Below are positions 34,401-64,000 of a stretch of DNA of 64,000 nt, in pieces (the stretch's first letter is position 1; the number at the start of each line of letters is the position of its first letter). Below the pieces are notes generated by a model that searched no databases, was not told the DNA's origin, and saw nothing but the letters and a program-made list of their open reading frames with translations. A program made the position numbers and the translations under genes. Origin of the DNA: Ostrea edulis (taxonomy: Eukaryota); NCBI RefSeq assembly GCF_947568905.1, contig NC_079165.1, positions 101,122,001 through 101,186,000 on the forward strand, given 5' to 3'.

Positions 34401-36928
34401 GGAGAGCATGTAACCTCTTCCAACGTGAACTTTCCTATCTCCGTGCCAGAAACTCGGGCTCCAGCACAGAGCTAAGTAATTGATAAAACTCCTATTTATT
34501 CTGTCCTTTGTAATAAAATAATGCATGTATAACCATGGTTACGAAGAACATGAAGACTACAACCAAAATTGTGAAAGCCATTACCCCTGGACCAGTTAGA
34601 AGGGGGGAAATCAGTAGAGGAATTTCTTTTCAAGATAAGGACAATTTATTTGCGGTTTTTTGAATATCTAATACCTTTTTGATTGAGCAGTTTATTCAAG
34701 TGTTGTTTCAATTTACTCAATGCTCATGGGTCTCTTGTTACAATATGACACAAGAATAAACGTAAAAGTTGTATTACTTACAAGTAGAATGGCACAATCA
34801 TTAGTGGACTTAAGATGTAAAACTGCATGTCGTTATTCAGATACCAGGACCAACCCAAACACTGTTAATTAACAAAACGTAGAACTGTATGTCATTATTC
34901 AGATAGAGGGACAAACACTTAATTAACAAAATCAGTCAGCAATTATTTCTCAATATTTATCTTAAATCTAATCATATTGACGTAGACAATAAATCATTAA
35001 CCATACATCATTGGTAAAGACTATGGTCCCCTTTCCGATTCACCATTTTTTGACTACCCAACAAACCTACAGACGGCAGACTGTCATTACAAATTCTACA
35101 GGTACTAGATAGGGTGTATGACGTATGGACTGTTCACATGATTTACCAAGTCTTTGGCTCCAAAGAAGTTGTCGATGTATAGAAAGTTTTTCCACCACAC
35201 TCTCTTACAAGTCTCATCTGGGTGGGGTTTATTGGGACTAAAAATCAGGTGGGGGTAAATTGTAATGTACATGCCAATCACCATCATGTAAACTGGGGTT
35301 AGTCTGGTGAAAACAGAAAACGAAAGAATTATACAATATATAAAGTACTGAATTCAATTGTAGATGATAATTTGTAGTTCCTACAATATCTTATCGATAT
35401 AAAATTATCAGTGAAGTTGAATAACGCATTTCAAATTTTGAACATATCAAAGCTAACAACATTATTACCTCCAAAATCGATGGAAGTAGAACAGAAACCA
35501 GTTGATCCGCCCCTTGGTTTTGCTCATTTGTTTTAATAACAAGTATGAAGTCAACAAACCACTGAAAATAGACACACTATATATCAAATTTCTCTGAGAA
35601 AATAGATATCAATATATTTTTTTTTCAATGCTTAATACTATGGATTCATTTGATGTGCGTACAATAATTGAATTAAAGATCTTTTCAAATAATTGTTGAT
35701 ATCATCAAATCTATATTATTGCCTACATTAATGAAATTGTTGATAGCATTAACGAATCTGCTGATATTAACTCTCTTCAATAAATTGATAGATATGATGC
35801 GCGCTATAATTCAATATTGAAGTGAGCAATTCAATTAATGCGCGCATCATTCAATTAAAGTGCGGGATCTTTGCATTATTGTTCTCTTCAGTTGAATATT
35901 TGAATTACCATTGAATTGTTGCCCTCTTCAATCAAATTAATGACATCATTAATTCAGTTGATACGCACAATAATTTCTTTAGAGAGAGATGTCCACAACT
36001 GATCTCTTTAATTGTTGCTCTCTTTCAGAGAAATGATGCGCTTTGATTCCAAATACAACAACTGAATTCAAGAGATCATTAATACTGAATTACAAATAAA
36101 TTTCCCTAGAAACAATTCCACCACATTTATACGCGCTACAATTTAAAGAACAATAATTATAAATTGATAATAAATGAACACATTAGTTCAAAAACTGCCC
36201 GTAATAATTCAATTCATGCATGCATCAGATTAATTATTTTGCGCAATAATTCAATACATGCGCACATCAATTCAATTGATGAGAGCAATGATTGATTTGA
36301 TGCACGCATCAATGGAATTACTGTGCGCAATAGTTAACGATATAGAAGATCTTCAAGTATTTGCGTTTATGCTAATTAACGCTTCATATAAAAGCGGTAA
36401 ACAATTAGATATAGGAACTGCTTCTCTGCCAAATGCTTGATATGTTGAGCTGAGATGATACATTAAAAACCGAGGTTCCGTGTCGCGACAGTCGTTGATA
36501 CGTTAAAGAATCATCACTGCTACGCCTCCGAGCGTCATGCATACATGTAGACTTAAATTTATAGTTTGTTGATGTCAAAGGGACGTAACTCAAACCAGTA
36601 AACGATGCTAAAACATTACCTGAGAACGAAGAATGTATCAACGGCAACCAAGGCATTGAAAATGGCCTGGGACGAGACACGACCGAGGAATTCTTGGTAA
36701 TACGTCAACACATTGGCTGCAATTAGAATTATAAGTTATTCAGTATGTTTAATTATATGCAACAGACAGTTTGCTGAGCTATACAAACCCATAATGAAGG
36801 ATCCGTACAAATCATATTTTGTTGGAGAAAACAGCCACTCTAGTTCACGGTTTCTACCTATCATACGTACTTATCATGGATTTGTACTTCTCATACATAC
36901 TAATTTCTTACCATGGACATAAGATTGA

Positions 36929-37402: not shown

Positions 37403-39771
37403 AATGTACATGCCTGTCCACCCCAACCCTCATCCCTATTATTTTTAATATTGGTAGCGAATGAGAAGGGTCATGAATGTAATCCTCTTGAATTAGGATT
37501 TTGAAAATTTCCAAATCATCTGCGTCTCTCCCCCCCCCCCTTTTTTTTGAAAAACGATGATACGTGCCTGATTTTCGAAATATTGGGACTGTGTACACGT
37601 ATTAAGATGTATGAGAAAGAATTTGTTATAACTGATTGATAACTGTACTTGGATTGTGTTTATTCTGAGGTTTGGGTTGTTGGATCACTTGGATGTCTCC
37701 ATTTTCCGCCCTGAGTTTGTAGTTACTGTCAGACGAGTTACTGCTAGTGTCGATTGGTTTCTCATTGTCCGCCTCCTTACGTGAACCTTTTATTTTGGGC
37801 CAGACAACGATGATGACGTCATACAACGTTCCCTCCACGATAAGGATCAGAAAGACAATTAAGATAATACTGAAAGAAAACATACATTAAAGAGGTGCAT
37901 TGGCTTATAGGTGAAGGAATTTCGTTAACGATTAACCTTTGAATTACGATGTCGTGTAAAATGTTCAAGACATACATACATGTAACATGTATGGCGTGTA
38001 AAACTTTGCTAAATCGATAATCTTGTGATGTATGTTCAATATCTTGTGATGTATGTTCAATATCTCGTGATGTATGTTCAATATCTCGTGATGTATGTTC
38101 AATATCTCGTGATGTATGTTCAATATCTCGTGATGTATGTTCAATATCTTGTGATGTATGTTCAATATCTTGTGATGTATATTTTATATCTCGTGATGTC
38201 TGTTCGATAATCTTGTGATGTATGTGCAATATTTTCAGTATGTTAAATTTTTGTTCTTTTATTTTCCAATTCATTTGCCGTCAGTTACAGCTTGTATTGC
38301 TTTAAACTGTACATGTAAGCGGATAAAATTTCTGCATCTAAACAGATTATTCTATCTAAATCACCAACTAAACTTAACAGTTTCTCCTAACCACTCATTG
38401 CGGATATTTCCACGTGTATTTTAGACTTTCAGAACTCCGCATGTTTAGACCTGCATTTTCTATCGACTTAGCGTACCTGAAATGTTTCCTTTTTATAAGA
38501 ATGACTAAGGTAAGATCTCTCCCTAACTGAGATTTAAATCAAACTTTGATAAGTGATTGAGTAATCAATATATGTTCCATATTGCTAGGGTGCCCATGTG
38601 AATTGTTCCGGCCTACAATTCCCATTAGACTGACCTAAACGTTTTCAGACATTCTTCAATAAAGACATCAAATATTATGTCTCGTGTTAAAGAAACCATT
38701 CAGTCTGTTGCAAAGTGTTGTATATAGTATGTGTATAACACATTCTAACACAGTTTTAGCAAAGATCAGATGAATGCCGCGGTTATTATTTTACGATATA
38801 CCTTCATACGTACATGTAATAATTGATTACGATATAAAGTTGATACACATCACGCTTGCATTTCATGTTTTGCTAATACAACAATAATGTTGATAACTAA
38901 TAATTCAGTTTTATAATCATTAACACTAATCAATATGATTAAATATATAAATGACTGAATAACTTTGTCATTCAACATAAATCAATCCTCTGCATTCTGT
39001 GATCGAAACACACGTAAACAAACACAATGAATAGACAAGTTAACCCTCTTCCACGTATGTATAGTTTTCTTGGACTGTATGTATTAAAAGCAGTTAATAT
39101 AATCCGTCGATATCAAACTAAATACTTGAAATATTTTTCAAAACAGATTTAGTATACCCTACCATCTCACCAGTTTCGTCATTAAAAAGACAAAAACATT
39201 TAGGCCTAGACTGTCAAGACGTCACGGTGATCTAATTTGTAGCTGTATAGGTAAACTTTCTGAGTCGTAGTGTAATAGAAATGACGTTCTTCTTTACGTG
39301 GATGATACTGGATAACCTTCTTGGTCTCAAAATGTTCTTTGAAATATAAATCCATGACTAACATCCAGAGCTGCTTTTATATTTCACAACATTTTTCGAC
39401 CTCGAAGGTTATCCTGCAAGAAACATGAAAACGCGATCTTTATTTCATAGATATTATTTGGAAATAACGCACATTCTTTAAAACGCGTAAACTCTCTATG
39501 TTTTCAGGTATATGAGGCTAAGATCTTAAATGTGAAAACCAGTCTTTCCCTACACTGAATATAAAAGTCCACACTGCTTACTCACACGACTATTTTGTCA
39601 CTGGTCTCCAGCTGATCATCCTCTACTGGAGTTGGGCAGGTTATTGGATAGGCTGTCACTGTGTTATTGCCAAGCGGTATGCTGTACAGAACTAGAGAGA
39701 AGCAACAAACAACGTGACATAAACCAATATTGTGCCCCTTCCTCTTAGAAAAGATGAGAGAGAGAAAGGTG

Positions 39772-48618: not shown

Positions 48619-51600
48619 TTACTTGGCCTCCTTTTTGTCGCGACTTGAGAACATGACTTTCTCGAGTCCCATGAACGGTGATTCAAATGTGATGGATAAG
48701 ATAAAGGCCATTCCATAAGAAACGACCAGATTGGCGAGGAAGATGTACACCTGCCAAATAAAAGAATATCATATATATATATATATATGTGTGTGTGTAT
48801 TTGAAATCGTAATGAAACACTTGGCAGATGTTCATAATTCATGGAATATTGCAGTACTTACGAAGTCCAGATCAGACAAATAGAACGGGAAGTTCCTGTT
48901 GAGGTAGTACACATACATGACCAAGGGATGTACCAAATAGGCGCAGTAAGTCAACCGAGAAAGAGGCACAAAGGCTTTCCACGACAGTAAGGTGTTAATG
49001 TAACCTGCAAGCAAAGCACACCATTACATATCGAACTATTGCAAAAATATTCCTATCAAAAAGTTTGTAGGAAGTTGCCTAAATTACTTAAACGTATTAT
49101 ATTTGGCGTGTACGATATTTGGCGGAAATCGTTTTTTCAACAAGTTATCATAGATTTGATTTAGCGCATTCCTGAATTACTTTAAACATCTAGATTTACG
49201 GATGGCATTTAGCGATGTACTTGATTTAGCGGAAGCTGCGTTCCTCCAAAAGCGCTAAATAGAATACAAAGCCAAATGTAATACATTTACAGTATCAATG
49301 AAGTAAAACTTCGTTTGATAAAATTGAAGAAACTGCTTCTTAATATAGCTACATGTAAATTTCAAACTATACATTCAGTACGAACAATAATTTGTTGCCC
49401 AGAATCTAATCCAAAAATAGTTACCGCCATTGCCGGTGGCACAAGCGAAGATGACCCAGCAGACAGCGGCACCCCACACTGTCCTGTTGACGGCGTTATA
49501 CAGGGCGGTGACCTCTTTAGACAGTTCAACAGGATTATCAGGCTTCACTGTGTCGTAAATACCATACAGAACAGCACTGGCCGAGGCCGCCGCCACTACC
49601 CACCCCAACAGGTTTACAAACTGTAAAACAATATCAGAACTGGTACTCATATATTTCGCAATTTCAGTGACTTATAGGTACGCAGTACAAGAAAAAAAGA
49701 TTGTTATATAATCGGTACTTGAAAATTTTAAGCCTTGTCATAGGGTATTAACTCATGTTCCAACTTGAGCTTCTGAGATTTGTTAGAACACTGAATGATC
49801 AGTAAAACTAAGCATCATTTTGTACGTTAGATACAATGTACATGTTCTTGTGCAGGTTTTTTTATATGAAGAATTAGATTTCTCTGTCCCTCTTTCAGGT
49901 ATTGCGTTGAAAATGTAGGGGAAGATATAACTGTTACAAAATATAAGTAGAAAAATGATTGAAGATACCTATTTAAATGTACGAAAATGCACAGAAAATA
50001 GTAACCCAAGAAGTATGTGGGTGACAAAAATACTCGTCCATTTTATGATTTGAACATATATCCCACCCTTTTTCTAGATCATTCCATCGACTGAGAACTT
50101 AGTCCACGTAGTTGACATTTTATATACTTACGATATTCATTCGACATTTGCATTTGGTGATGTAGAGTAGGTAACCTGTGATCACACCACAAATGTAGGG
50201 CCCCATACGACACCATGGAACAATGTAATAGTCCTCGAAGAAAGAAAGTCGACTACAAAACAAGGAATGGATTTATCCTTTCTCTCATATCTTCAATGTT
50301 TCTGTACATTCTTTAAATTATTGAAAACTACAGCGAATATAAGGTTTTATATTGAGTATATTTGCTCTGAAGATTAGATGGTCAAAAGAGATTTGTTACG
50401 TCCTCTTACTCTGCATCTTTTGGTCCTCCACCATCCGTATGAAGTGGGAGGTTATTCACATAACTGATCACCCCAGGAGTGATGGTAAAAATCAGCAGAA
50501 ATACGGCACTGACCATGGCGCCCACTATTTTATTACTGAAATACACATATAAATTTAACGACGAAAAACGAAATTTAAAAAATCAGCATAGTTCTATGTA
50601 AGGTGATGATAACGAACAGTGATCAATCTCATAACTCCTACAAGCAATACAAAATAGATAGTTGGGCAAACACGGACCTCTGGACACACCAGAGGTGGGA
50701 TCAGGTGTCTAGGAGGAGTAAGCATCCCGCTAATTATATTCAGATTTGTAAATGCCGCTCTTTATATCATAGGACAGTGGAATTTACAAGTGTAATTTTC
50801 AAGGAATGTATATACTATTATCTATATATAGGTTCTTAGTATTTGCATTTGTAGGTCACCTGAGTCACTTTGGTGACATGTTGCGATTGGAAGCTGTCCA
50901 TCGTTATCCATTGTGCTTTAACATTTTAACGTTATCAATTTCTTCTCTGAAATTACGTGGTATTTTTCATCAACTTTGGTATTTAAAAAATTATGGGTAG
51001 GAGATCTAAATTGTGAATATTATGGTCATGGTATCTGAAGAGGGTGGGTTGAAAACCTCGATACATGTATTGTCTTTGAAAATTAACCTCTTTACTACAG
51101 TAAATCTAGTAGACAAACCGTGTGTATAGGCCAAGTCATGATGAGCAAGGATGCTTCTACCAAAATTGTGAAACTTCTTGTACCGGTGCTAGGGTGGGAA
51201 TTTATAGTTCATTCAAAAAATGCATTAATCAGTTAAGATTATCCTTTTTACCCCTGCATAGCTTGTAGAAAAGGTATATGCATGGTTATTAGAGCATGGA
51301 GTCTTCTATCAAAATGGCAAAATTCCTGACTCAGGGGTCAAACTCTAAGGTGGGGCCAAAGTTTTAAATGCATTTACTACTGTAGTATTTTGAAAACCTA
51401 CATCTATGCATTACTTTAGTGCATTGTGAAGAAATAGTATTTAGCTCTCTTACAAAGTTGTAAAATTTCCTACCCCATGGCCAGGGGTTCGGGTCTGAGG
51501 GCAGGCCAAAATGGTTGTATAGTTAAAATGCATTATCTTTAAAACTGTAAAAATCTTCGTCTTTACGGTTGTAAGTTTCCTATCCTTGGGCCAGTGGTTC

Positions 51601-54600
51601 GGGTCTGAAGGCAAGGCCAAAATATGTATCATGAGTTAACTTTGCTACCTCCCCGCCAGGAGTTTAGGCTCTAACACACAGCAAAGTAGTTAATAAACAT
51701 TCTTATTTCTTTCGTGCTTTGTCACAAAATAATACATCTATAATTATTTTATAAAAATATGAAAACTAGAACAAAAATTGTGAAAATCATTACCCTTATA
51801 CCAGTTGTATTGGGGGAAAATCAGTACAGGGATTTTTTTTCATGATAAGAACAAATTATTTTCAGTTTTTTAATAATTAACGCCTTTTTTCGATTTAGTT
51901 GTTCATTCAAGAGGTGTTGCAATTTTCTCACATAATTATAAAAGCTCATAGGTCTCTTGTTACAATATGCCACAAGAACAAACGTAAAAGTTGTATTACT
52001 TACAAGTAGAATGGCACAATCATTAGTGGACTTAAGATGTAGAACTGCATGTCGTTATTCAGATACCAGGACCAACCCAAACACTGTTAATTATCAAAAT
52101 GTAAAAACTTTATGTCATTAAAGGTGAAGATAACGAGCAGTGATCAATCTCATAACTCCTATAAGCAATACAAAATAGATAGTTGGACAAGCACGGACCC
52201 CTGGACACACCAGAGGTGGGATCAGGTGCCTAGGAGGAGTAAGCATCCCCTGTCGATAGGTCACATCCGCCGTGAGCCCTATATCTTGATCAGGTAAACA
52301 GAGTTATCCACAGTCAAAATCAGTGTGCCAAGAACGGCCTTACAATTGGTATGAAACACGTCAGACAGCATTTGACCCAATGATAGGTTGTATTGACGAA
52401 CTAGATCGTTATAACGACCATAGAATTTGCGAAATGCTGACTTCAATCGAGACTGTTGAAACCCCTGTATCATCAACTTATTTGTCAGTAGCTTGCCTCG
52501 ATTTGAAAACTGACTATACGCAGAAAAAACTGTGTTGTATCGAATCAGTTGAGATATATAAACACATATGCAGGTGACAATGGAATATTGCTACATAGAT
52601 ATGGGAAGTTGACGACGGAGAAGCTGAAATCATCCCGTTTGTCATACAGTTGAGTTGTCAGTTTGCCGTTAATGTCTACATTCAATAAAATATCTAAGTA
52701 TGAAGCAGAAGTGGACGTCTTTGTGGTGTTTTTTTATTTCAAGCTCACAGGGATTGACATATGAATGAAAGTTATTAGACAAAACGTCGTCGATATATCT
52801 AAATGTGGAACTGAAATTTTTTCTTCTAGCGTATAGGTTTTTAAATAAATTCTGCTTCATATGAATATAGAAATAGATCAGCTAACAAAGCAGCACAATT
52901 CGTGCCCATGGGAATTCCAACAGACTGTTTGAAGATATGATCACCAAAGACCACGAAGATATTGTCAATGAGGAACTCTAGCATATTTCAACTTCCAAGT
53001 ACTTGTGCGTGGAATCAGAGTGGTGTTTAACAAAATAAGTTTTTGGATGACTGATCACTAGACATGATTCAAAAGAACAGGATAAACACTTTTAATTAAC
53101 AAAATGTGGAACTATGTGTTATTATTCAGATCACCGTTAATTAACAAAATGTAGAATTGTCTGTCTTTATTCAAATACCAGGATAAACACTGCTAATTAA
53201 CCAAATGTAGAACTGTCTGTCATTATTCAAATACCAGGATAAACATTGTTAATTAACCAAATGCAGAACTGTCTGTCATTATTCAAATACCAGGATAAAC
53301 ATTGTTAATTAACCAAATGTAGAACTGTCTGTCATTATTCAAATACCAAGATAAACATTGTTAATTAACCAAATGTAGAACCGTCTGTCATTATTCAAAT
53401 ACCAGGATAAACATTGTTAATTAACCAAATGTAGAACTGTCTGTCATTATTCAAATACCAAGATAAACATTGTTAATTAACCAAATGTAGAACCGTCTGT
53501 CATTATTCAAATACCAGGATAAACATTGTTAATTAACCAAATGTAGAACCGTCTGTCATTATTCAAATACCAAGATAAACATTGTTAATTAACCAAATGT
53601 AGAACTGTCTGTCATTATTCAAATACCAGGATAAACATTGTTAATTAACCAAATGTAGAACTGTCTGTTATTATTCAAATACCAGGATAAACATTGTTAA
53701 TTAATAAAATGTAGAACTGTCTGCCATTATTCAAATACCAGGATAGACATTGTTAATTAACAAAACGTTGAACTGTCTGTCATTATTCAAATACCAGGAT
53801 AAACACTGCTAATTAACAAAACTTAGAACTGTATACCAACATTCAGATACTAGGACCAACCCAAACAATGTTAATGAACAAAATGTAAAAATTGTAGTTG
53901 ATTATTCAGATACCAGGACAATCACTGTTGATTAACAAAACGTAGAACTGTCCGTCTTTATTCAAATACCAGGGCAAACATTGTTAATTAACAAAACGAG
54001 GAACTGTATCTCATTATTAAGATAACAGGATAATCACTATCAATTAACAAAATCAATTCAGCAATTGATTATTGAACCTAATCAAATTGATGTCGACATT
54101 AAAACATGATATACTAGCTTTTACCGTGTATAATTCACAATTTCATATCATGATTCAGATAGCAGAACAAACACTGTTAATTAACAAAACGTAGAACTGT
54201 ATGCCAATATTCAGATACAAGGACAAACACTATTAATTAATAAAATCATTCAGCAATTATTTCTCAATATTTATCTTAAATCTAATCATATTGACGTAGA
54301 CAATAAATCATTAACCATACATCATTGGTAAAGACTATGGTCCCCTTTCCGATGCACCATTTTTTGACTACCCAACAAACCTACAGACGGCAGACTGTCA
54401 TTACAAATTCTACAGGTACTAGATAGGGTGTATGACGTATGGACTGTTCACATGATTTACCAAGTCTTTTATTCCAAAGAAGTTGTCGATGTATAGAAAG
54501 TTTTTCCACCATACTCTCTTACAAGTCTCATCTGCATTGGTTTTATTGGGTCCAAAAATCAGGTGGGGGTAAATTGTAACGTACATGCCAATCACCATCA

Positions 54601-56421
54601 TGTAAACTGGGGTTAGTCTGGTGAAAACAGAAAACGAAAGAATTTTACAATATATAAAAAGTATGCCATTCAATTGTAGATGATAATATGTAGTTCCTAT
54701 AATATCTTATCAACATAAACGATCAGTGAAGTGGAATGATCAATTTTAAATTTTGAACATATCAAAGCAAACAACATTATTACCTCCAAAATCGATGGAA
54801 GTAGAAGAGAAACCAGTTGATCCGCCCCTTGGTTTTGCTCATTTGTTTTAGTAACAAGTATGAAGTCAACAAACCACTGAAAATAGACATAATTTATATA
54901 AAATTTCTCTGAGAAAATAAATATCAGTATTTTTACAATGCTAAAAACTATGGAGCATCAAATCAACAAAAACTGAAATACTTGAAGATATTTTTTAAAA
55001 GTTTTTAAAGATATCATGGACTAATTTGATGACTGCAACAATTGATTTAAATATTTCTTCAAAAAATTAATGGTATCTTCAAATCTAAATTATTGTACAT
55101 ATAAATTAAAATGTTGATAGCAGATTATGGTGAATTGAATTATTGTTCTTTTCAAATGAATTGATGATATCAACAATTGAATTGATGCGTGCTATAATTC
55201 AATTGAAGAGAGCAATTATTCAATTAATGCATTTATTGAATTGATGAAAACAATAATTAATTTGATGTGCGCATCAATTCAATTATTACCTACAATAATT
55301 AATTGATGCATGAAAGGTGAAGATAACGAACAGTGATTAATCTTATAACTCCTACAAGCGATACAAAATAGATAATTGGGCACACCAGAGGTGGGGTTAG
55401 GTGCCTAGGAGGAGTAAGCATCCCCTGTCGACAGGTCACACCCGCCGTGAGCCCTATATCTTGATCACATAAACGGAGTTATCCGTAGTTAAAATCAGTG
55501 TACATGCATCAAATCAATAACTCCACTTAATAATTCAATAGATGCGCGAATAAATTCAGTTCAATTATTACCCGCAATAAGTAATTGATGCATGCATCAA
55601 ATCATTGATTGCGCACATTAATTCAATAAATGTGCGTATCAATTAAATTGATGAGAGTAATTATTGATTTGATGCGCACACCAATTGAATTATTGCGTGC
55701 AATGATTGAATTAATGATACCTTCAAATAATTAATGATATCTTCAATTATTTGCGTTTATGTTAATTTAGCTCTCGATATAAAGCCGGTGACTGTGGCTC
55801 AGGGATAATTAAAGCGATTGCTTCGTGATTGGGAGGTTGTAGGGTCATGGTCATGGTCGTATAAAATCTAAAACGTAAAATTAGATATAGTAACTGCTTC
55901 TTTGCCAAATGCTTGGTATTTTGAGCTGAGATTCGCGGGTTTTTTGGACGATATATTAAAACCGAGGTTCCATGTCGCTACAGGCGTTGGTACCTTAAAG
56001 AACCATCATTGCTACGCCTCCGAGCGTCGTGCACACATTTAGATTTAAATCCGTTGTACTTCACTTACAGCTGGTGACATCTAAATGTGAGTAAAAAGAA
56101 CAGAGAGCAAACAAGTAAACGATGCTAAAACATTACCTGAGAACGAAGAATGTATCAACGGCAACCAAGGCATTGAAAATGGCCTGGGACGAGACACGAC
56201 CGAGAAATTCTGCGTAATATGTCAGAAAATTGGCTGCAATTAGAATTATAAGTTATTCAGTATGTTTAATTATATGCATCAGACAATACCATACCTTACA
56301 CTGAAGTATCTCCACAAATCATCTATCACACTAGTCGCTTACCATGGACATAAGATTGGTGTTAAAGATGGGATATCAATATATTTTGAATTAATCCATC
56401 CTTTAATTTGCAATGAAAATG

Positions 56422-62400: not shown

Positions 62401-64000
62401 CTACATATGGAGTCTGCATTGATATTTTTCTATGTTGTTAATCCCCTAACGGTTTGTAAAACCAAAGTGGAATATAGCTTTCTTCTCCATTTGTCCGTCC
62501 GTCCCTCTCTCTGACTGTCATTCTCTCCCATTAGTTTTGCAGACTTATTTCTGTTATGCTTGCATGCATTCATTTGAAACTTGCTGTGTAGTTTCAGAGT
62601 GGCAAATTACAGATTAAGTTACGCTTGATGGACAAGTTTTAAAGAAATTAGGTGGTTTTTTTTACTCAACGGGATCGGGATGTGTTCCGATGGAAATAGA
62701 GATAGTCGACGAACCTCAATCGCTGATTTTGTAAATAAGAACTTCATTAATCTAACATTTCAAGCTCATTAATCGCAAAAGGAACATATCAATGAAGATG
62801 TATAGCAAATATGTTAATCCCGCTAGTATGTTTGTGTAGTTGGTGAGCGAAGTCTAATGCATCGGCAGTTCTCTATTCACTGCATTCCTACAATCGGCAG
62901 TTCTCTATTCACTGCATTCCTACAATCGGCAGTTCTCTATTCACTGCATTCCTACAATCGGCAGTTCTCTATTCACTGCATTCCTACAATCGGCAGTTCT
63001 CTATTCACTGCATTCCTACAATCGGGGGTATTCGATATCAGCCTTCAAACAGTTGATAGTAAGTAGTATGTAGAAGTCCTTTATAAATATACAGATGACG
63101 TCATGTGAATGTTATATTGGTGTGTTGTTTTGTGTCCCATTTACATGATTCTTTGAATATTATAAAGTATTATTTGCAAAGGCTATTCCATCCCTGATAA
63201 TAATTACCGGTACATGCATCCGACAACATTAAACTAATTGGATATTGGTAAGGTGGGTCATAGTTGAAGGTCAAACAATATCAAATGTACATTTTCTCAA
63301 ATATTTTAAAGTATAGTCGTCAATTAGTGGGGTTGTGCCGGTAAAGGACATGTATTGCTTATGCAATACTTTCAGAATGCTTGTTGGTCAAACAATTTCC
63401 AGGCTGTGCCATACATAGTATTACGACTTCGCAACCATATAAAGGTGATTTATCAATTTACCCAAATCTTTCGTATGTTAAGATATATTCTTACTTTTCA
63501 GTGCCCATGGTTGTGTCGATTGCAGACCAGAAATCACTCTGACAACATCACTCCGACAATTTGCAGAGGCATTCGTGTATTGCACAATTCCATTCAGGTA
63601 CAGCATCAGCATTTTCCCCGCAGTACTGGGATCTATGTTACCGCTAGTCAGCTGTTGTGCGATTTTCCCGAAGTCTAATCCGGAGGAGACACCGGTGTTT
63701 CCACCACCAAGCATTGAGCCGATGAATTTACCGATGTTAGGATTCTGGAGAATATTCTGGAAGATGTTTCCAAAGCCATCATTTGAAGAGTTGTTTTGGG
63801 AACCATTGCTTGGGCCTGAGGAATTGCCATTAGAGGATAAAGATCCCAGAAAATTGTTAAGGATGTTCTGAAAGACATTCCCTAGACCACCATTTGAAAT
63901 GTTGTTTTGGGAGCTGTTGTTTGTCTCTGGAGCGGTAAAGTTTGAAAGTTCTGAAATAAGATTCTGAAAGAGACCGCTCAAATCGGTTTGGTTGCTTTCC
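48619..64000 (-). CDS. nrf-6: NRF-6-like / O-acyltransferase-like protein, copy 2 (tandem paralog; start of exon 1 lies beyond the window)
   Basis: Exons: >64000-63495, 60920-60727, 60326-60230, 59917-59812, 57693-57473, 56977-56810, 56233-56137, 54876-54784, 54617-54461, 52083-52004, 50535-50410, 50252-50132, 49620-49425, 49004-48862, 48750-48619. Exons 2-15 have exactly the same lengths as in copy 1, and I saw no frameshift or stop. Confidence 0.92.
50600..50728 (-). mobile_element. 3'-terminal fragment of the same Penelope-like RT family
   Basis: AAGGTGATGATAACGAACAGTGATCAATCTC...AGGAGGAGTAAGCATCCC. Confidence 0.75.
52121..53067 (-). mobile_element. Second 5'-truncated copy of the Penelope-like RT family
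   Basis: Reverse-complement match to 47387-48334 (QGFQQSRLKSAFRKFYGRYNDL, RYIDDVL, GIPMGTNCA). Confidence 0.85.
53068..54245. repeat. 56-bp minisatellite (about 20 units) derived from the exon-10 acceptor and 5' coding sequence
   Basis: Unit GGATAAACATTGTTAATTAACCAAATGTAGAACTGTCTGTCATTATTCAAATACCA aligns with the exon 10/intron 9 junction at about 52030-52110, with a 6-bp deletion. Confidence 0.9.
55313..55501 (-). mobile_element. 3' end of the Penelope-like RT family
   Basis: AAAGGTGAAGATAACGAACAGTG...ATCCGTAGTTAAAATCAGTGT. Confidence 0.8.
55785..56095 (+). mobile_element. tRNA-derived SINE (same family as the split copy; orthologous partial copy at about 36395-36560 in paralog 1)
   Basis: A-box-like TGGCTCAGGG; shared body ...TGCTTCTTTGCCAAATGCTTG...GAGGTTCCATGTC...TTAAAGAACC...CTTACAGCTGG. 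Confidence 0.7.
56452..56660 (-). mobile_element. tRNA-headed SINE-like insertion next to (TA)n
   Basis: Minus strand has A-box-like TGGTCGAGCGG and B-box-like GTGAGTTCAACCCC. The acceptor stem pairs poorly. It is absent at the equivalent site of paralog 1. Confidence 0.5.
57925..58215. mobile_element. 291-bp MITE with perfect 34-bp TIRs and a 10-bp TSD (Mutator-like), nested in an older IR-bounded element (about 57810-58728)
   Basis: TIR CAATCGGAACTCCTCGAATGTCTCGCGCACTCGA; direct repeat CCGTCGGTGT at 57915-57924 and 58216-58225. Confidence 0.85.
58729..59127 (-). mobile_element. Non-LTR retrozyme: 352-nt monomer plus terminal redundancy
   Basis: Direct repeat ATGTAAAACTTATACGGT(T/A)CCAATTTTGATGCACC(A/G)GATG at 58729 and 59081 (period 352). 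One complete and one half hammerhead motif lie on the minus strand. Confidence 0.8.
58759..58802 (-). ncRNA. Minimal type I hammerhead ribozyme
   Basis: Minus strand: GCATCA CTGAAGA GACA ttatt TGTC GAAA TGCGCA TC TGGTGC. Stem I is GCATCA/TGGTGC, stem II is GACA/TGTC, stem III is the palindrome ATGCGCAT, and the predicted cleavage triplet is AUC (58765). Confidence 0.85.
62861..63025. repeat. 32-bp tandem repeat x5
   Basis: Unit ATCGGCAGTTCTCTATTCACTGCATTCCTACA, apparently perfect copies. Confidence 0.95.

What the first reader, a model, noticed from the sequence alone, without database searches (positions are those of the whole stretch)
52004..54245. Intronic array made from the gene's own splice acceptor plus the WYLNNDMQFY codons; the expanded variant has a dead AG
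Seen: on the minus strand each 56-bp unit reads TTAATTAACA(G/A)|TGTTT-ATCCTGGTATTTGAATAATGACAGACAGTTCTACATTTGG. That is the last 12 nt of intron 9 joined to the first ~50 nt of exon 10 (C-L-G-W-S-W-Y-L-N-N-D-M-Q-F-Y), minus 6 nt. The real exon is the last unit, so even its pyrimidine tract is exon-derived. Paralog 1 has only one extra unit (34862-34918) while paralog 2 has about 20. The homogeneous core (about 53237-53750) carries AA instead of AG; older flanking units (about 53086, 53187, 53801, 53921, 54170, 54225) keep AG. The first unit is also split by a retroelement at 52121. Inference: this is a decoy-acceptor array where only splice-dead units were tolerated to expand, or a tunable exon-skipping or NMD switch on a highly conserved motif of the acyltransferase domain. 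A 56-nt unit is not a multiple of 3, so use of a cryptic acceptor would frameshift.
Basis: partly seen in the sequence, partly recalled or inferred. Interest (0 to 1): 0.8.

Follow-up and report, generated by a model that had tools for sequence, protein, structure and literature searches.

The report
Splice-junction minisatellite in nrf-6 intron
An intron of an nrf-6-like acyltransferase gene holds about 20 head-to-tail copies of its own splice acceptor plus the start of the next exon, a repeat type already described as a "mirage" minisatellite; a neighbouring gene copy expanded units with a live AG, so the "only dead acceptors may expand" idea does not hold.

Summary
Upstream of exon 10 (52004-52083, minus strand) lies a 56-bp tandem array (TRF: 16.3 copies, 88% matches). 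Each unit is about 15 nt of intron tail with the acceptor, plus about 47 nt of exon head. The real exon is the last unit. The ten core units read AACAAT (dead AG). A high-copy repeat splits the unit next to the exon. The motif occurs genome-wide only in this three-gene tandem cluster, so it is not a dispersed repeat.

The selective reading is not supported. The third paralog (P3), 11 kb beyond the window, has all 15 exons open (dN/dS about 0.2). It carries about 15 units abutting its exon; 13 keep CAG, including all nine recently expanded ones. Four of them match the true acceptor at every base from -20 to +3. The AA state in paralog 2 is one founder mutation that hitch-hiked with the expansion. 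P3 also has acceptor-junction duplications at exons 2 and 7.

This is the known "mirage" class of tandem intron/exon-boundary duplications (amphioxus Adh3 and globins). The human F7 IVS7 repeat is the donor-side mirror. No usable RNA was found, so splicing is untested. Earlier notes of this scan (s1-281877, s1-292101) report similar arrays on other DNA of this genome. Verdict: new member of a known kind, most likely a tolerated by-product.

The parts
52004..52083 (-). Real exon 10 of paralog 2 (80 nt, phase 0 start). It encodes CLGWSWYLNNDMQFYILSPLMIVPFY and is the terminal, only complete 'unit' of the array. AG is at 52085-52084 and donor GTAAGT starts at 52003.
52084..52120 (-). Last 37 nt of intron 9. 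This is the 3' half of the unit that was split by the insertion. It holds the TTTTTAC (copy of the Q-F-Y codons, branch-point-like, A at -19) and TAATTAACAG acceptor.
   Evidence: sequence; the branch-point role is inference
52121..53062 (-). Frame-broken fragment of a high-copy retroelement-like repeat, in sense orientation. It has RT-like GIPMGTNCAALLADLFL and RYIDDVL motifs by eye, but no Pfam hit. It is inserted inside the proximal unit.
   Evidence: sharp contig ends at 52120/52121, depth 10^4-10^5; no Pfam match
53063..53200 (-). Proximal degenerate units: 53099 (AAG, 5' half of the split unit), 53144 (CGG, 45 nt) and 53200 (CAG).
53201..53760 (-). Homogeneous core of ten 56-bp units. 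All read AACAAT (G>A at the acceptor), all have the 6-nt deletion in the exon head, and CC/CT variants alternate in a 112-bp dimer pattern.
53761..54240 (-). Older distal units: 53816 CAG, 53878 CAT (full-length 62 nt), 53935 CAG, 53991 CAA, 54047 TAG, 54184 CAG and 54240 TAG. Includes a ~193-bp block duplication that also copied about 60 nt of upstream intron (54048-54108 resembles 54241-54310).
54461..54617 (-). Exon 9 of paralog 2. The donor follows 54461 (TTG|GTAAAT), a phase-0 junction to exon 10.
34873..34926 (-). Single decoy unit of paralog 1 (54 nt, acceptor now AAG after a 2-nt loss). It is the counterpart of the outermost units of paralogs 2 and 3.
34782..34861 (-). Real exon 10 of paralog 1.

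Best explanation
This is a 'mirage'-type splice-junction minisatellite.

Origin. In the ancestor of three tandem nrf-6-like genes, a ~62-nt piece spanning the intron-9/exon-10 border was duplicated in tandem. The piece was about 15 nt of intron tail with the AG, plus the first ~47 nt of the exon. The breakpoints look like a short AT/T-rich microhomology. Only the 3'-most copy continues into the rest of the exon and its donor, so it stays the exon. All upstream copies became intron.

Turnover. The array then changed by slippage and unequal exchange, independently in each paralog:
- Paralog 1 holds 1 decoy.
- Paralog 2 holds about 20. Here a 56-nt variant carrying a 6-nt deletion and a G>A at the acceptor was amplified as 56/112-bp blocks. 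A block of ~193 bp was also duplicated, and a retroelement landed in the proximal unit.
- Paralog 3 holds about 15. Its 58/62-nt units have a full-length exon head and a live CAG, as expected if unequal exchange with the real exon regenerated them. A 182-bp trimer was duplicated exactly.

Splicing. The decoys are most likely ignored. The inferred reason is exon definition: only the last unit is followed 80 nt later by GTAAGT. If a decoy is used occasionally, it gives a stop within 37 codons and the transcript would be lost to NMD.

The dead AG of the paralog-2 core is a hitch-hiking founder mutation, not a condition for expansion.

Shown: anatomy, origin from the exon junction, restriction to this cluster, independent expansions, live-AG expansion in paralog 3, and intact paralogs under constraint. 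Inferred: the microhomology origin, the exchange mechanism, exon definition and NMD.
For: - Tandem array and unit anatomy.
- Units align to acceptor plus exon head. The local alignment score is 52-54, against a shuffle mean of 25 and maximum of 41.
- Not dispersed. Own-genome DNA search hits only paralogs 2 and 3. A 30-nt motif with up to 3 mismatches gives 27 hits, 25 of them in the cluster, and 0 for the reversed control. Fourteen other family exons are single. The two nearest outside paralogs have an ordinary T-rich tract and no decoy.
- Three paralogs each have 15 open exons and conserved GT/AG signals. dS is 0.09 for P1-P2 and 0.17-0.18 to P3, with omega 0.19-0.23.
- Unit tree: the real exons group together (95/97). 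An 'outer' unit type is shared by all three paralogs. An 'inner' type is shared by P2 and P3, with the P2 units grouping together (91/75). Identical unit pairs show recent block duplication.
- AG census and context identity.
- Further acceptor-junction duplications at exons 2 and 7 of paralog 3 show a general mutational habit.
- Orthologous outer units differ by 6-12%, in the range of coding dS.
- The published class has the same anatomy and the same 'many but not all units keep AG, splicing undisturbed' behaviour: PMC3087553 and PMC3902484. The donor-side analogue is F7 IVS7, PMC1557585.
Against: - No RNA evidence either way. The only candidate RNA runs hold mostly the transposon pieces and no contig across exon 10, the exon 9-10 junction or the array.
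- Expression and correct splicing of paralogs 2 and 3 are inferred from open frames and dN/dS only.
- The unit tree rests on about 60 columns and most forks are weakly supported.
- Array length in the homogeneous core is not confirmed by an independent sample, because short-read contigs are absent at 53100-53500.
- A weak regulatory effect of the array on splicing efficiency cannot be excluded.
Confidence: 0.78

Rival explanations
1. One reading: a decoy-acceptor array shaped by selection. Live AG units are harmful, so only splice-dead (AA) units could expand. Alternatively, the array is a tunable exon-skipping or NMD switch on exon 10.
For: In paralog 2 all ten recently expanded units are AACAAT, while 7 of 10 older units keep AG. 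Any decoy use gives an early stop. In paralog 1 the lone decoy has a weakened AAG.
Against: - Paralog 3 expanded live-AG units right next to its exon. Nine lie within 540 nt, and four are identical to the true site over -20..+3. Yet it is intact with omega about 0.2.
- The P2 core is one clade, so AA is a single event.
- AA also sits unexpanded at P2 53991 and P3 75710.
- Decoys at exons 2 and 7 of P3 also keep CAG.
- Outer units diverge at about the silent rate.
- Published mirages do not disturb splicing.
Confidence: 0.1
2. The units act as a cis-acting splicing element. The repeated branch-point-like, U2AF or SR-protein binding sites would enhance or buffer recognition of the weak, A-rich acceptor of exon 10. 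On this view the array is kept because the native pyrimidine tract was displaced.
For: The exon-10 acceptor context (TTTTACGTTTTGTTAATTAACAG) is poorer in pyrimidines than the other acceptors of the gene and than the same exon in outside paralogs. Each unit carries a TTTTAC/TTCTAC motif 17-19 nt before its AG. All three paralogs kept at least one unit.
Against: Paralog 1 works with a single decoy. In paralog 2 the array was pushed about 1 kb away by an insertion only 37 nt upstream of the AG, with no sign of gene decay. Copy number ranges from 1 to 20 among genes with similar constraint. There is no binding or RNA data.
Confidence: 0.07
3. Assembly artefact: the array, or its length, is a mis-assembly of a shorter repeat.
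For: Short-read contigs of an independent run are missing over the homogeneous core 53100-53500. Published mirage loci have been mis-assembled before.
Against: Contigs of run X6 cover 53732-54197 with 4 differences and 54172-54511 with none. Three paralogs carry distinct, internally consistent variants. The variant pattern inside the core (CC/CT, CAG/CGG) is not what collapsed or expanded reads would give. The existence of the array is safe; only the exact copy number is open.
Confidence: 0.03

Closest known systems
'Mirage' minisatellites of amphioxus: Adh3 (Canestro et al. 2002, cited in PMC3087553), globin BflGb6/BflGb9 (PMC3087553), troponin C and PGBD5 (PMC3902484)
   Same: Both are head-to-tail repeats whose unit spans an intron/exon boundary. 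BflGb6 duplicates the 3' end of an intron plus the 5' part of the next exon, exactly as here. The authentic exon sits at the end of the array. Many but not all units keep AG. There is homogenisation inside the array, with older divergent units at its edge.
   Different: The phylum differs: earlier notes of this scan call the genome a flat oyster, which I did not test. Units here are 56-62 bp against 150-160 bp in BflGb6 (Adh3: 10-72 bp). The array here is shared by three tandem paralogs with separate expansions. Undisturbed splicing and allelic length variation, shown for amphioxus, could not be tested here.
Human F7 intron 7 37-bp VNTR (PMC1557585)
   Same: It is a minisatellite whose terminal element spans an exon/intron border, so the true splice site is accompanied by a row of identical pseudo-sites. 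These are functional in principle but normally silent.
   Different: F7 multiplies the donor (5' splice site), with the array downstream of the exon. Here the acceptor is multiplied upstream of the exon. In F7 the choice of the true site was shown by 50 minigene constructs. Here nothing is shown at RNA level.
Intron gain or extension by tandem duplication across splice signals (Drosophila cases, PMC2891723; model discussed in PMC3087553)
   Same: Tandem duplication that includes a splice signal turns former exon sequence into intron without changing the mRNA.
   Different: No new intron is created here. An existing intron is lengthened, from about 0.3 kb in paralog 1 to 2.4 kb in paralog 2, and the duplicate has gone on to form a minisatellite.
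Decoy exons or decoy splice sites that promote intron retention or NMD
   Same: Intronic, non-productive splice sites lie close to a real exon, and their use would give premature stops.
   Different: Such decoys are defined by RNA evidence and usually by conservation. Neither is available here. The census of live and dead AGs across the paralogs does not fit selection on decoy strength.

Membership tests
Mirage (splice-junction) minisatellite | Head-to-tail tandem repeat of minisatellite unit size | tested here: met
   TRF reports period 56, 16.3 copies, 88% matches, score 1304. Unit list.
Mirage (splice-junction) minisatellite | The unit spans an intron/exon boundary of the host gene and includes the splice signal plus exon sequence | tested here: met
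   Units align to TTAATTAACAG plus the first ~47 nt of exon 10. Alignment score is 52-54 against a shuffle maximum of 41.
Mirage (splice-junction) minisatellite | The authentic exon is the terminal member of the array | tested here: met
   True in paralogs 1, 2 and 3. In paralog 2 it is separated only by a later insertion.
Mirage (splice-junction) minisatellite | Many but not all units retain the AG/GT signal | tested here: met
   P2: 7 of 20 units keep AG. P3: 13 of 15. P1: 1 of 1 (AAG).
Mirage (splice-junction) minisatellite | Concerted evolution inside the array, with edge units excluded from homogenisation | tested here: met
   The core units form one group with identical pairs. The outer units group with their counterparts in the other paralogs.
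Mirage (splice-junction) minisatellite | Regular splicing of the mRNA is not disturbed | not testable with these tools
   No run on record as RNA holds the gene, and laid contigs do not cover exon 10 or the junction. Only indirect support: open frames, conserved splice signals and omega about 0.2.
Mirage (splice-junction) minisatellite | Length instability between alleles or individuals | tested here: inconclusive
   Short-read contigs break in the core. Copy number differs between paralogs (1, ~20, ~15), which shows turnover but not allelic variation.
Selected decoy-acceptor array or NMD switch | Live AGs are depleted among expanded units wherever the array expands | tested here: not met
   The paralog 3 expansion consists of CAG units, four of them identical to the true site over -20..+3.
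Selected decoy-acceptor array or NMD switch | Decoy junctions are present in RNA and respond to NMD inhibition or array length | not testable with these tools
   No RNA coverage.
Selected decoy-acceptor array or NMD switch | Units are conserved beyond the neutral rate | tested here: inconclusive
   Orthologous outer units match at 50/54, 45/51 and 48/51 positions, against coding dS of 0.09-0.18. The units are too short for a test.
Dispersed repeat or transposon-borne satellite | Copies occur at many unrelated genomic sites | tested here: not met
   All array hits lie in the three-gene cluster. The tool's caveat applies: very common words are skipped.
NRF-6-like acyltransferase-3 gene (host gene) | N-terminal NRF domain (PF20146) | tested here: met
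   The exon-2 peptide scores 39.4 bits against a cut-off of 27, E = 9e-10.
NRF-6-like acyltransferase-3 gene (host gene) | Acyl_transf_3 domain (PF01757) over the membrane part | tested here: inconclusive
   Only single-exon peptides could be scanned. Exon 14 gives 17.6 bits, below the cut-off of 31.

The most novel reading that the evidence does not exclude
Splice-junction minisatellites may be a recurrent, fast-turning-over feature of this animal's genes. There are three acceptor junctions in one gene here, plus arrays noted elsewhere in the genome. The paralog-3 array puts nine acceptors within 540 nt of the true site, all identical or nearly identical to it over -20..+3, in a gene under purifying selection. 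It could therefore act as a copy-number-dependent drain of transcripts into NMD. At the least, it would show that 3' splice-site choice here is set entirely by the downstream donor and not by the local acceptor sequence.
Probability: 0.1. Interest if true: 0.6.

Novelty: new member of a known kind. Interest (0 to 1): 0.35.

Why it matters
The array itself is a tolerated by-product of a known kind, so it adds a case and not a principle.

Its value is as a natural experiment. Three young paralogs carry the same exon with 1, ~20 and ~15 upstream copies of its acceptor. In one gene the copies are dead or distant. In another they are live and adjacent. With RNA data this would be an acceptor-side counterpart of the human F7 IVS7 model for how the spliceosome picks one site among identical ones.

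It also shows former coding sequence (the Q-F-Y codons) now lying where the branch point and tract of the true acceptor must be. And it shows how introns can grow eight-fold (0.3 to 2.4 kb) by this route.

Gene annotators should expect such arrays to seed false exon-10 starts.

Tried and rejected
- RNA evidence. Two run searches found no run on record as RNA. The one read-laying run showed that the 'RNA?' runs X1, X2 and X7 hold mainly the high-copy transposon pieces. One 195-nt contig lies on exon 12 and leaves the genome at the exon end. One lies on exon 9 plus intron 8. None covers exon 10, the exon 9-10 junction or the array. This gives no verdict on splicing.
- Array length in other individuals. 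Contigs of X6 cover the outer units only, so no verdict.
- Dispersed-repeat idea: rejected.
- Whole-exon duplicate idea for unit 54184: rejected. Similarity stops at about +46 of the exon. The following ~60 nt copy upstream intron instead.
- Pfam on the inserted element's ORF pieces: no hit. It is called retroelement-like only from RT-like motifs seen by eye and its copy number.
- Original mirage paper (PMC117041): not held. It is cited only through PMC3087553 and PMC3902484.
- Paper search for acceptor-side boundary repeats: one search found nothing and one malformed search failed.
- Cross-species comparison of intron 9: not attempted. 
- Donor-like sites inside the units: none close to the consensus, by eye.
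Full report
WHAT IS THERE

On the minus strand, exon 10 of an nrf-6-like gene occupies 52083..52004. It is 80 nt long, with AG at 52085-52084 and GTAAGT from 52003, and it encodes CLGWSWYLNNDMQFYILSPLMIVPFY. Exon 9 ends at 54461 followed by GT.

The 2.4-kb intron between them is largely a tandem array. TRF reports 53136-54053, period 56, 16.3 copies, 88% matches and score 1304. Reading it unit by unit gives 20 units, from 54240 down to 53099.

Each unit has two parts. The first is the intron tail TTAATTAACAG, with 3-4 further intron-like bases at the unit join. The second is the first ~47 nt of exon 10. A local alignment of a unit to acceptor plus exon scores 52-54, against a shuffle mean of 25 and a maximum of 41.

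Ten core units (53201-53760) are nearly identical. Nine of them have 0-2 differences from their consensus. All carry a 6-nt deletion in the exon head and read AACAAT instead of AACAG. Seven of the 20 units keep an AG: 54240, 54184, 54047, 53935, 53816, 53200 and 53099.

The unit next to the exon is split 37 nt upstream of the AG by a ~940-bp fragment of a very high-copy repeat. Contigs of four runs end sharply at 52120/52121, and depth there is 10^4-10^5. Other copies lie nearby.

THE HOST GENES

The window and its right flank hold three tandem paralogs on the minus strand. In window-equivalent coordinates they are P1 31434-43517, P2 48622-64272 and P3 70837-91597. P3 lies in loci L012, L014 and L016.

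Each has the same 15 exon equivalents without a stop. GT/AG signals are conserved at the boundaries inspected. Exon 2 carries the NRF domain (PF20146, 39 bits, cut-off 27). Exon 14 gives a sub-threshold Acyl_transf_3 hit.

Over 1656 aligned coding bases, dS is 0.09 for P1-P2 and 0.17-0.18 to P3, with dN/dS of 0.19-0.23. All three therefore look like working genes. P3 split off first.

NOT A DISPERSED REPEAT

A DNA search of the whole 895-Mb genome with four core units hits only P2 and P3. A 30-nt motif with up to three mismatches gives 27 places. Twenty-five are in this cluster, two are single exons of other family members, and the reversed control gives none. A looser codon-level pattern finds 14 further family exons, all single.

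The two closest outside paralogs have an ordinary T-rich tract before the same exon and no upstream copy. So the direction is exon to repeat, and the array is private to this cluster.

THE KEY COMPARISON

P1 has one decoy (34873-34926). P3 has about 15 units that abut its real exon directly (window-equivalent 75176-75959, which is L014:1176-1959). Thirteen of the 15 read CAG.

The nine youngest P3 units (58 or 62 nt) have the full-length exon head, including an exactly duplicated 182-bp trimer. Four of them are identical to the true acceptor at all 23 positions from -20 to +3, and five differ at 1-2 positions. They lie 58 to 536 nt upstream of the true AG.

Thus, in a paralog with the same signs of constraint, the live-AG variant is the one that expanded, and it did so next to the exon.

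In P2 the AA state belongs to one group of the unit tree. It is therefore one founder mutation that was copied, not ten events. AA also occurs in single, unexpanded units (P2 53991, P3 75710). Two expansions, one dead and one live, give no evidence for selection on the AG.

HISTORY

The unit tree is weak (62 columns) but consistent.
- The three real exons group together (95/97).
- An 'outer' unit type (GACATACAG) is shared by P1, P2 and P3. It is the founder copy and predates the gene duplications.
- An 'inner' type (GACAGACAG) is shared by P2 and P3. Within it the P2 units group together (91/75).

Expansion was therefore independent in P2 and P3. P1 lost the inner type or never gained it.

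The P3 units combine the exon's intact 5' part with the inner type's 3' part. This is what an unequal exchange between the real exon and a neighbouring unit would produce (inference).

P2 is layered. It has a ~193-bp block duplication that also copied ~60 nt of upstream intron, the 56-bp units, and a 112-bp dimer pattern in the core.

The unit join (…TACAT + TTT(A/G)TTAATTAACAG) fits a duplication between short AT/T-rich microhomologies in exon and intron (sequence; the mechanism is inferred).

Orthologous outer units match at 50/54, 45/51 and 48/51 positions. That is about the silent rate.

A GENERAL HABIT, NOT A PROPERTY OF THIS MOTIF

I scanned all exon borders of the three genes for nearby copies. 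This found two more acceptor-junction duplications, both in P3.
- Exon 7: 46-bp unit, two decoys (one CAG, one CTG).
- Exon 2: 42-bp unit, one decoy (CAG).

Earlier notes of this scan report further splice-junction minisatellites elsewhere in the same genome (I did not check them). Those notes also call the genome the European flat oyster, which I did not test.

HOW IT MOST LIKELY WORKS

Only the last unit runs on into the rest of the exon and a strong donor 80 nt downstream. Exon definition would therefore select it (inference from established splicing models).

The 37 nt that the insertion left before the P2 acceptor contain a TTTTTAC copied from the Q-F-Y codons, with its A at -19, and the AG. 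So all 3' signals of the true site probably lie in exon-derived sequence (inference).

Any decoy use would give a stop within 37 codons, so such transcripts would be lost to NMD. I could not test splicing. No run on record as RNA holds the gene, and the contigs laid do not cover exon 10, its junction or the array.

WHAT IS KNOWN

This anatomy has a name. [quoted passage not shown]
- Amphioxus BflGb6 duplicates the 3' end of an intron plus the 5' part of the next exon.
- Many but not all units keep AG.
- RT-PCR shows regular splicing.
- The arrays show concerted evolution with divergent edge units (PMC3087553; PMC3902484).

The donor-side mirror is the 37-bp VNTR of human F7 intron 7. Its pseudo-sites are functional but silent (PMC1557585).

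The present array meets the five structural criteria of a mirage. The two behavioural ones, undisturbed splicing and allelic instability, could not be tested.

VERDICT

The origin reading is supported. The 'only dead acceptors may expand / tunable switch' reading is not supported. This is a new member of a known kind, of moderate interest, mainly as a three-paralog natural experiment on acceptor choice.

Noticed in passing
L014:5656-5790 (window-equivalent 79656-79790) and L016:3513-3560 (87513-87560), paralog 3: There are two more acceptor-junction tandem duplications in paralog 3. At exon 7, a 46-bp unit gives two decoys plus the real site. At exon 2, a 42-bp unit gives one decoy plus the real site. 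Both are absent from paralogs 1 and 2.
   Followed up: partly
window 34927-35146 versus 54241-54460: The 5' part of intron 9 is 217/220 identical between paralogs 1 and 2, although their coding dS is 0.09. This looks like a gene-conversion tract that ends at the array. It agrees with scan note s1-287717.
   Followed up: partly
window 50597-50761, 52121-52303, 55302-55478: The same ~150-180-bp tail of a very high-copy repeat sits three times in introns of paralog 2, each time in sense orientation. It gives depths of 10^4-10^5 in all four runs laid. Joints between these copies are repeat cross-matches, not splicing.
   Followed up: partly
window 62861-63025: A perfect 32-bp tandem repeat (5.2 copies, 100% matches) lies in intron 1 of paralog 2.
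   Followed up: no
window 38020-38232: A 21-bp tandem repeat (10 copies, 91% matches) lies about 140 nt upstream of exon 5 of paralog 1. It is not obviously exon-derived.
   Followed up: no
window 50120-50235: A 195-nt contig of run X1 (guessed RNA) lies on exon 12 with 3 differences and leaves the genome exactly at the exon's 3' end. This is the only hint that some member of the cluster is transcribed and spliced.
   Followed up: no
window 30543-31127: A 128/100-bp tandem repeat (about 4 copies, 81% matches) lies just downstream of paralog 1.
   Followed up: no
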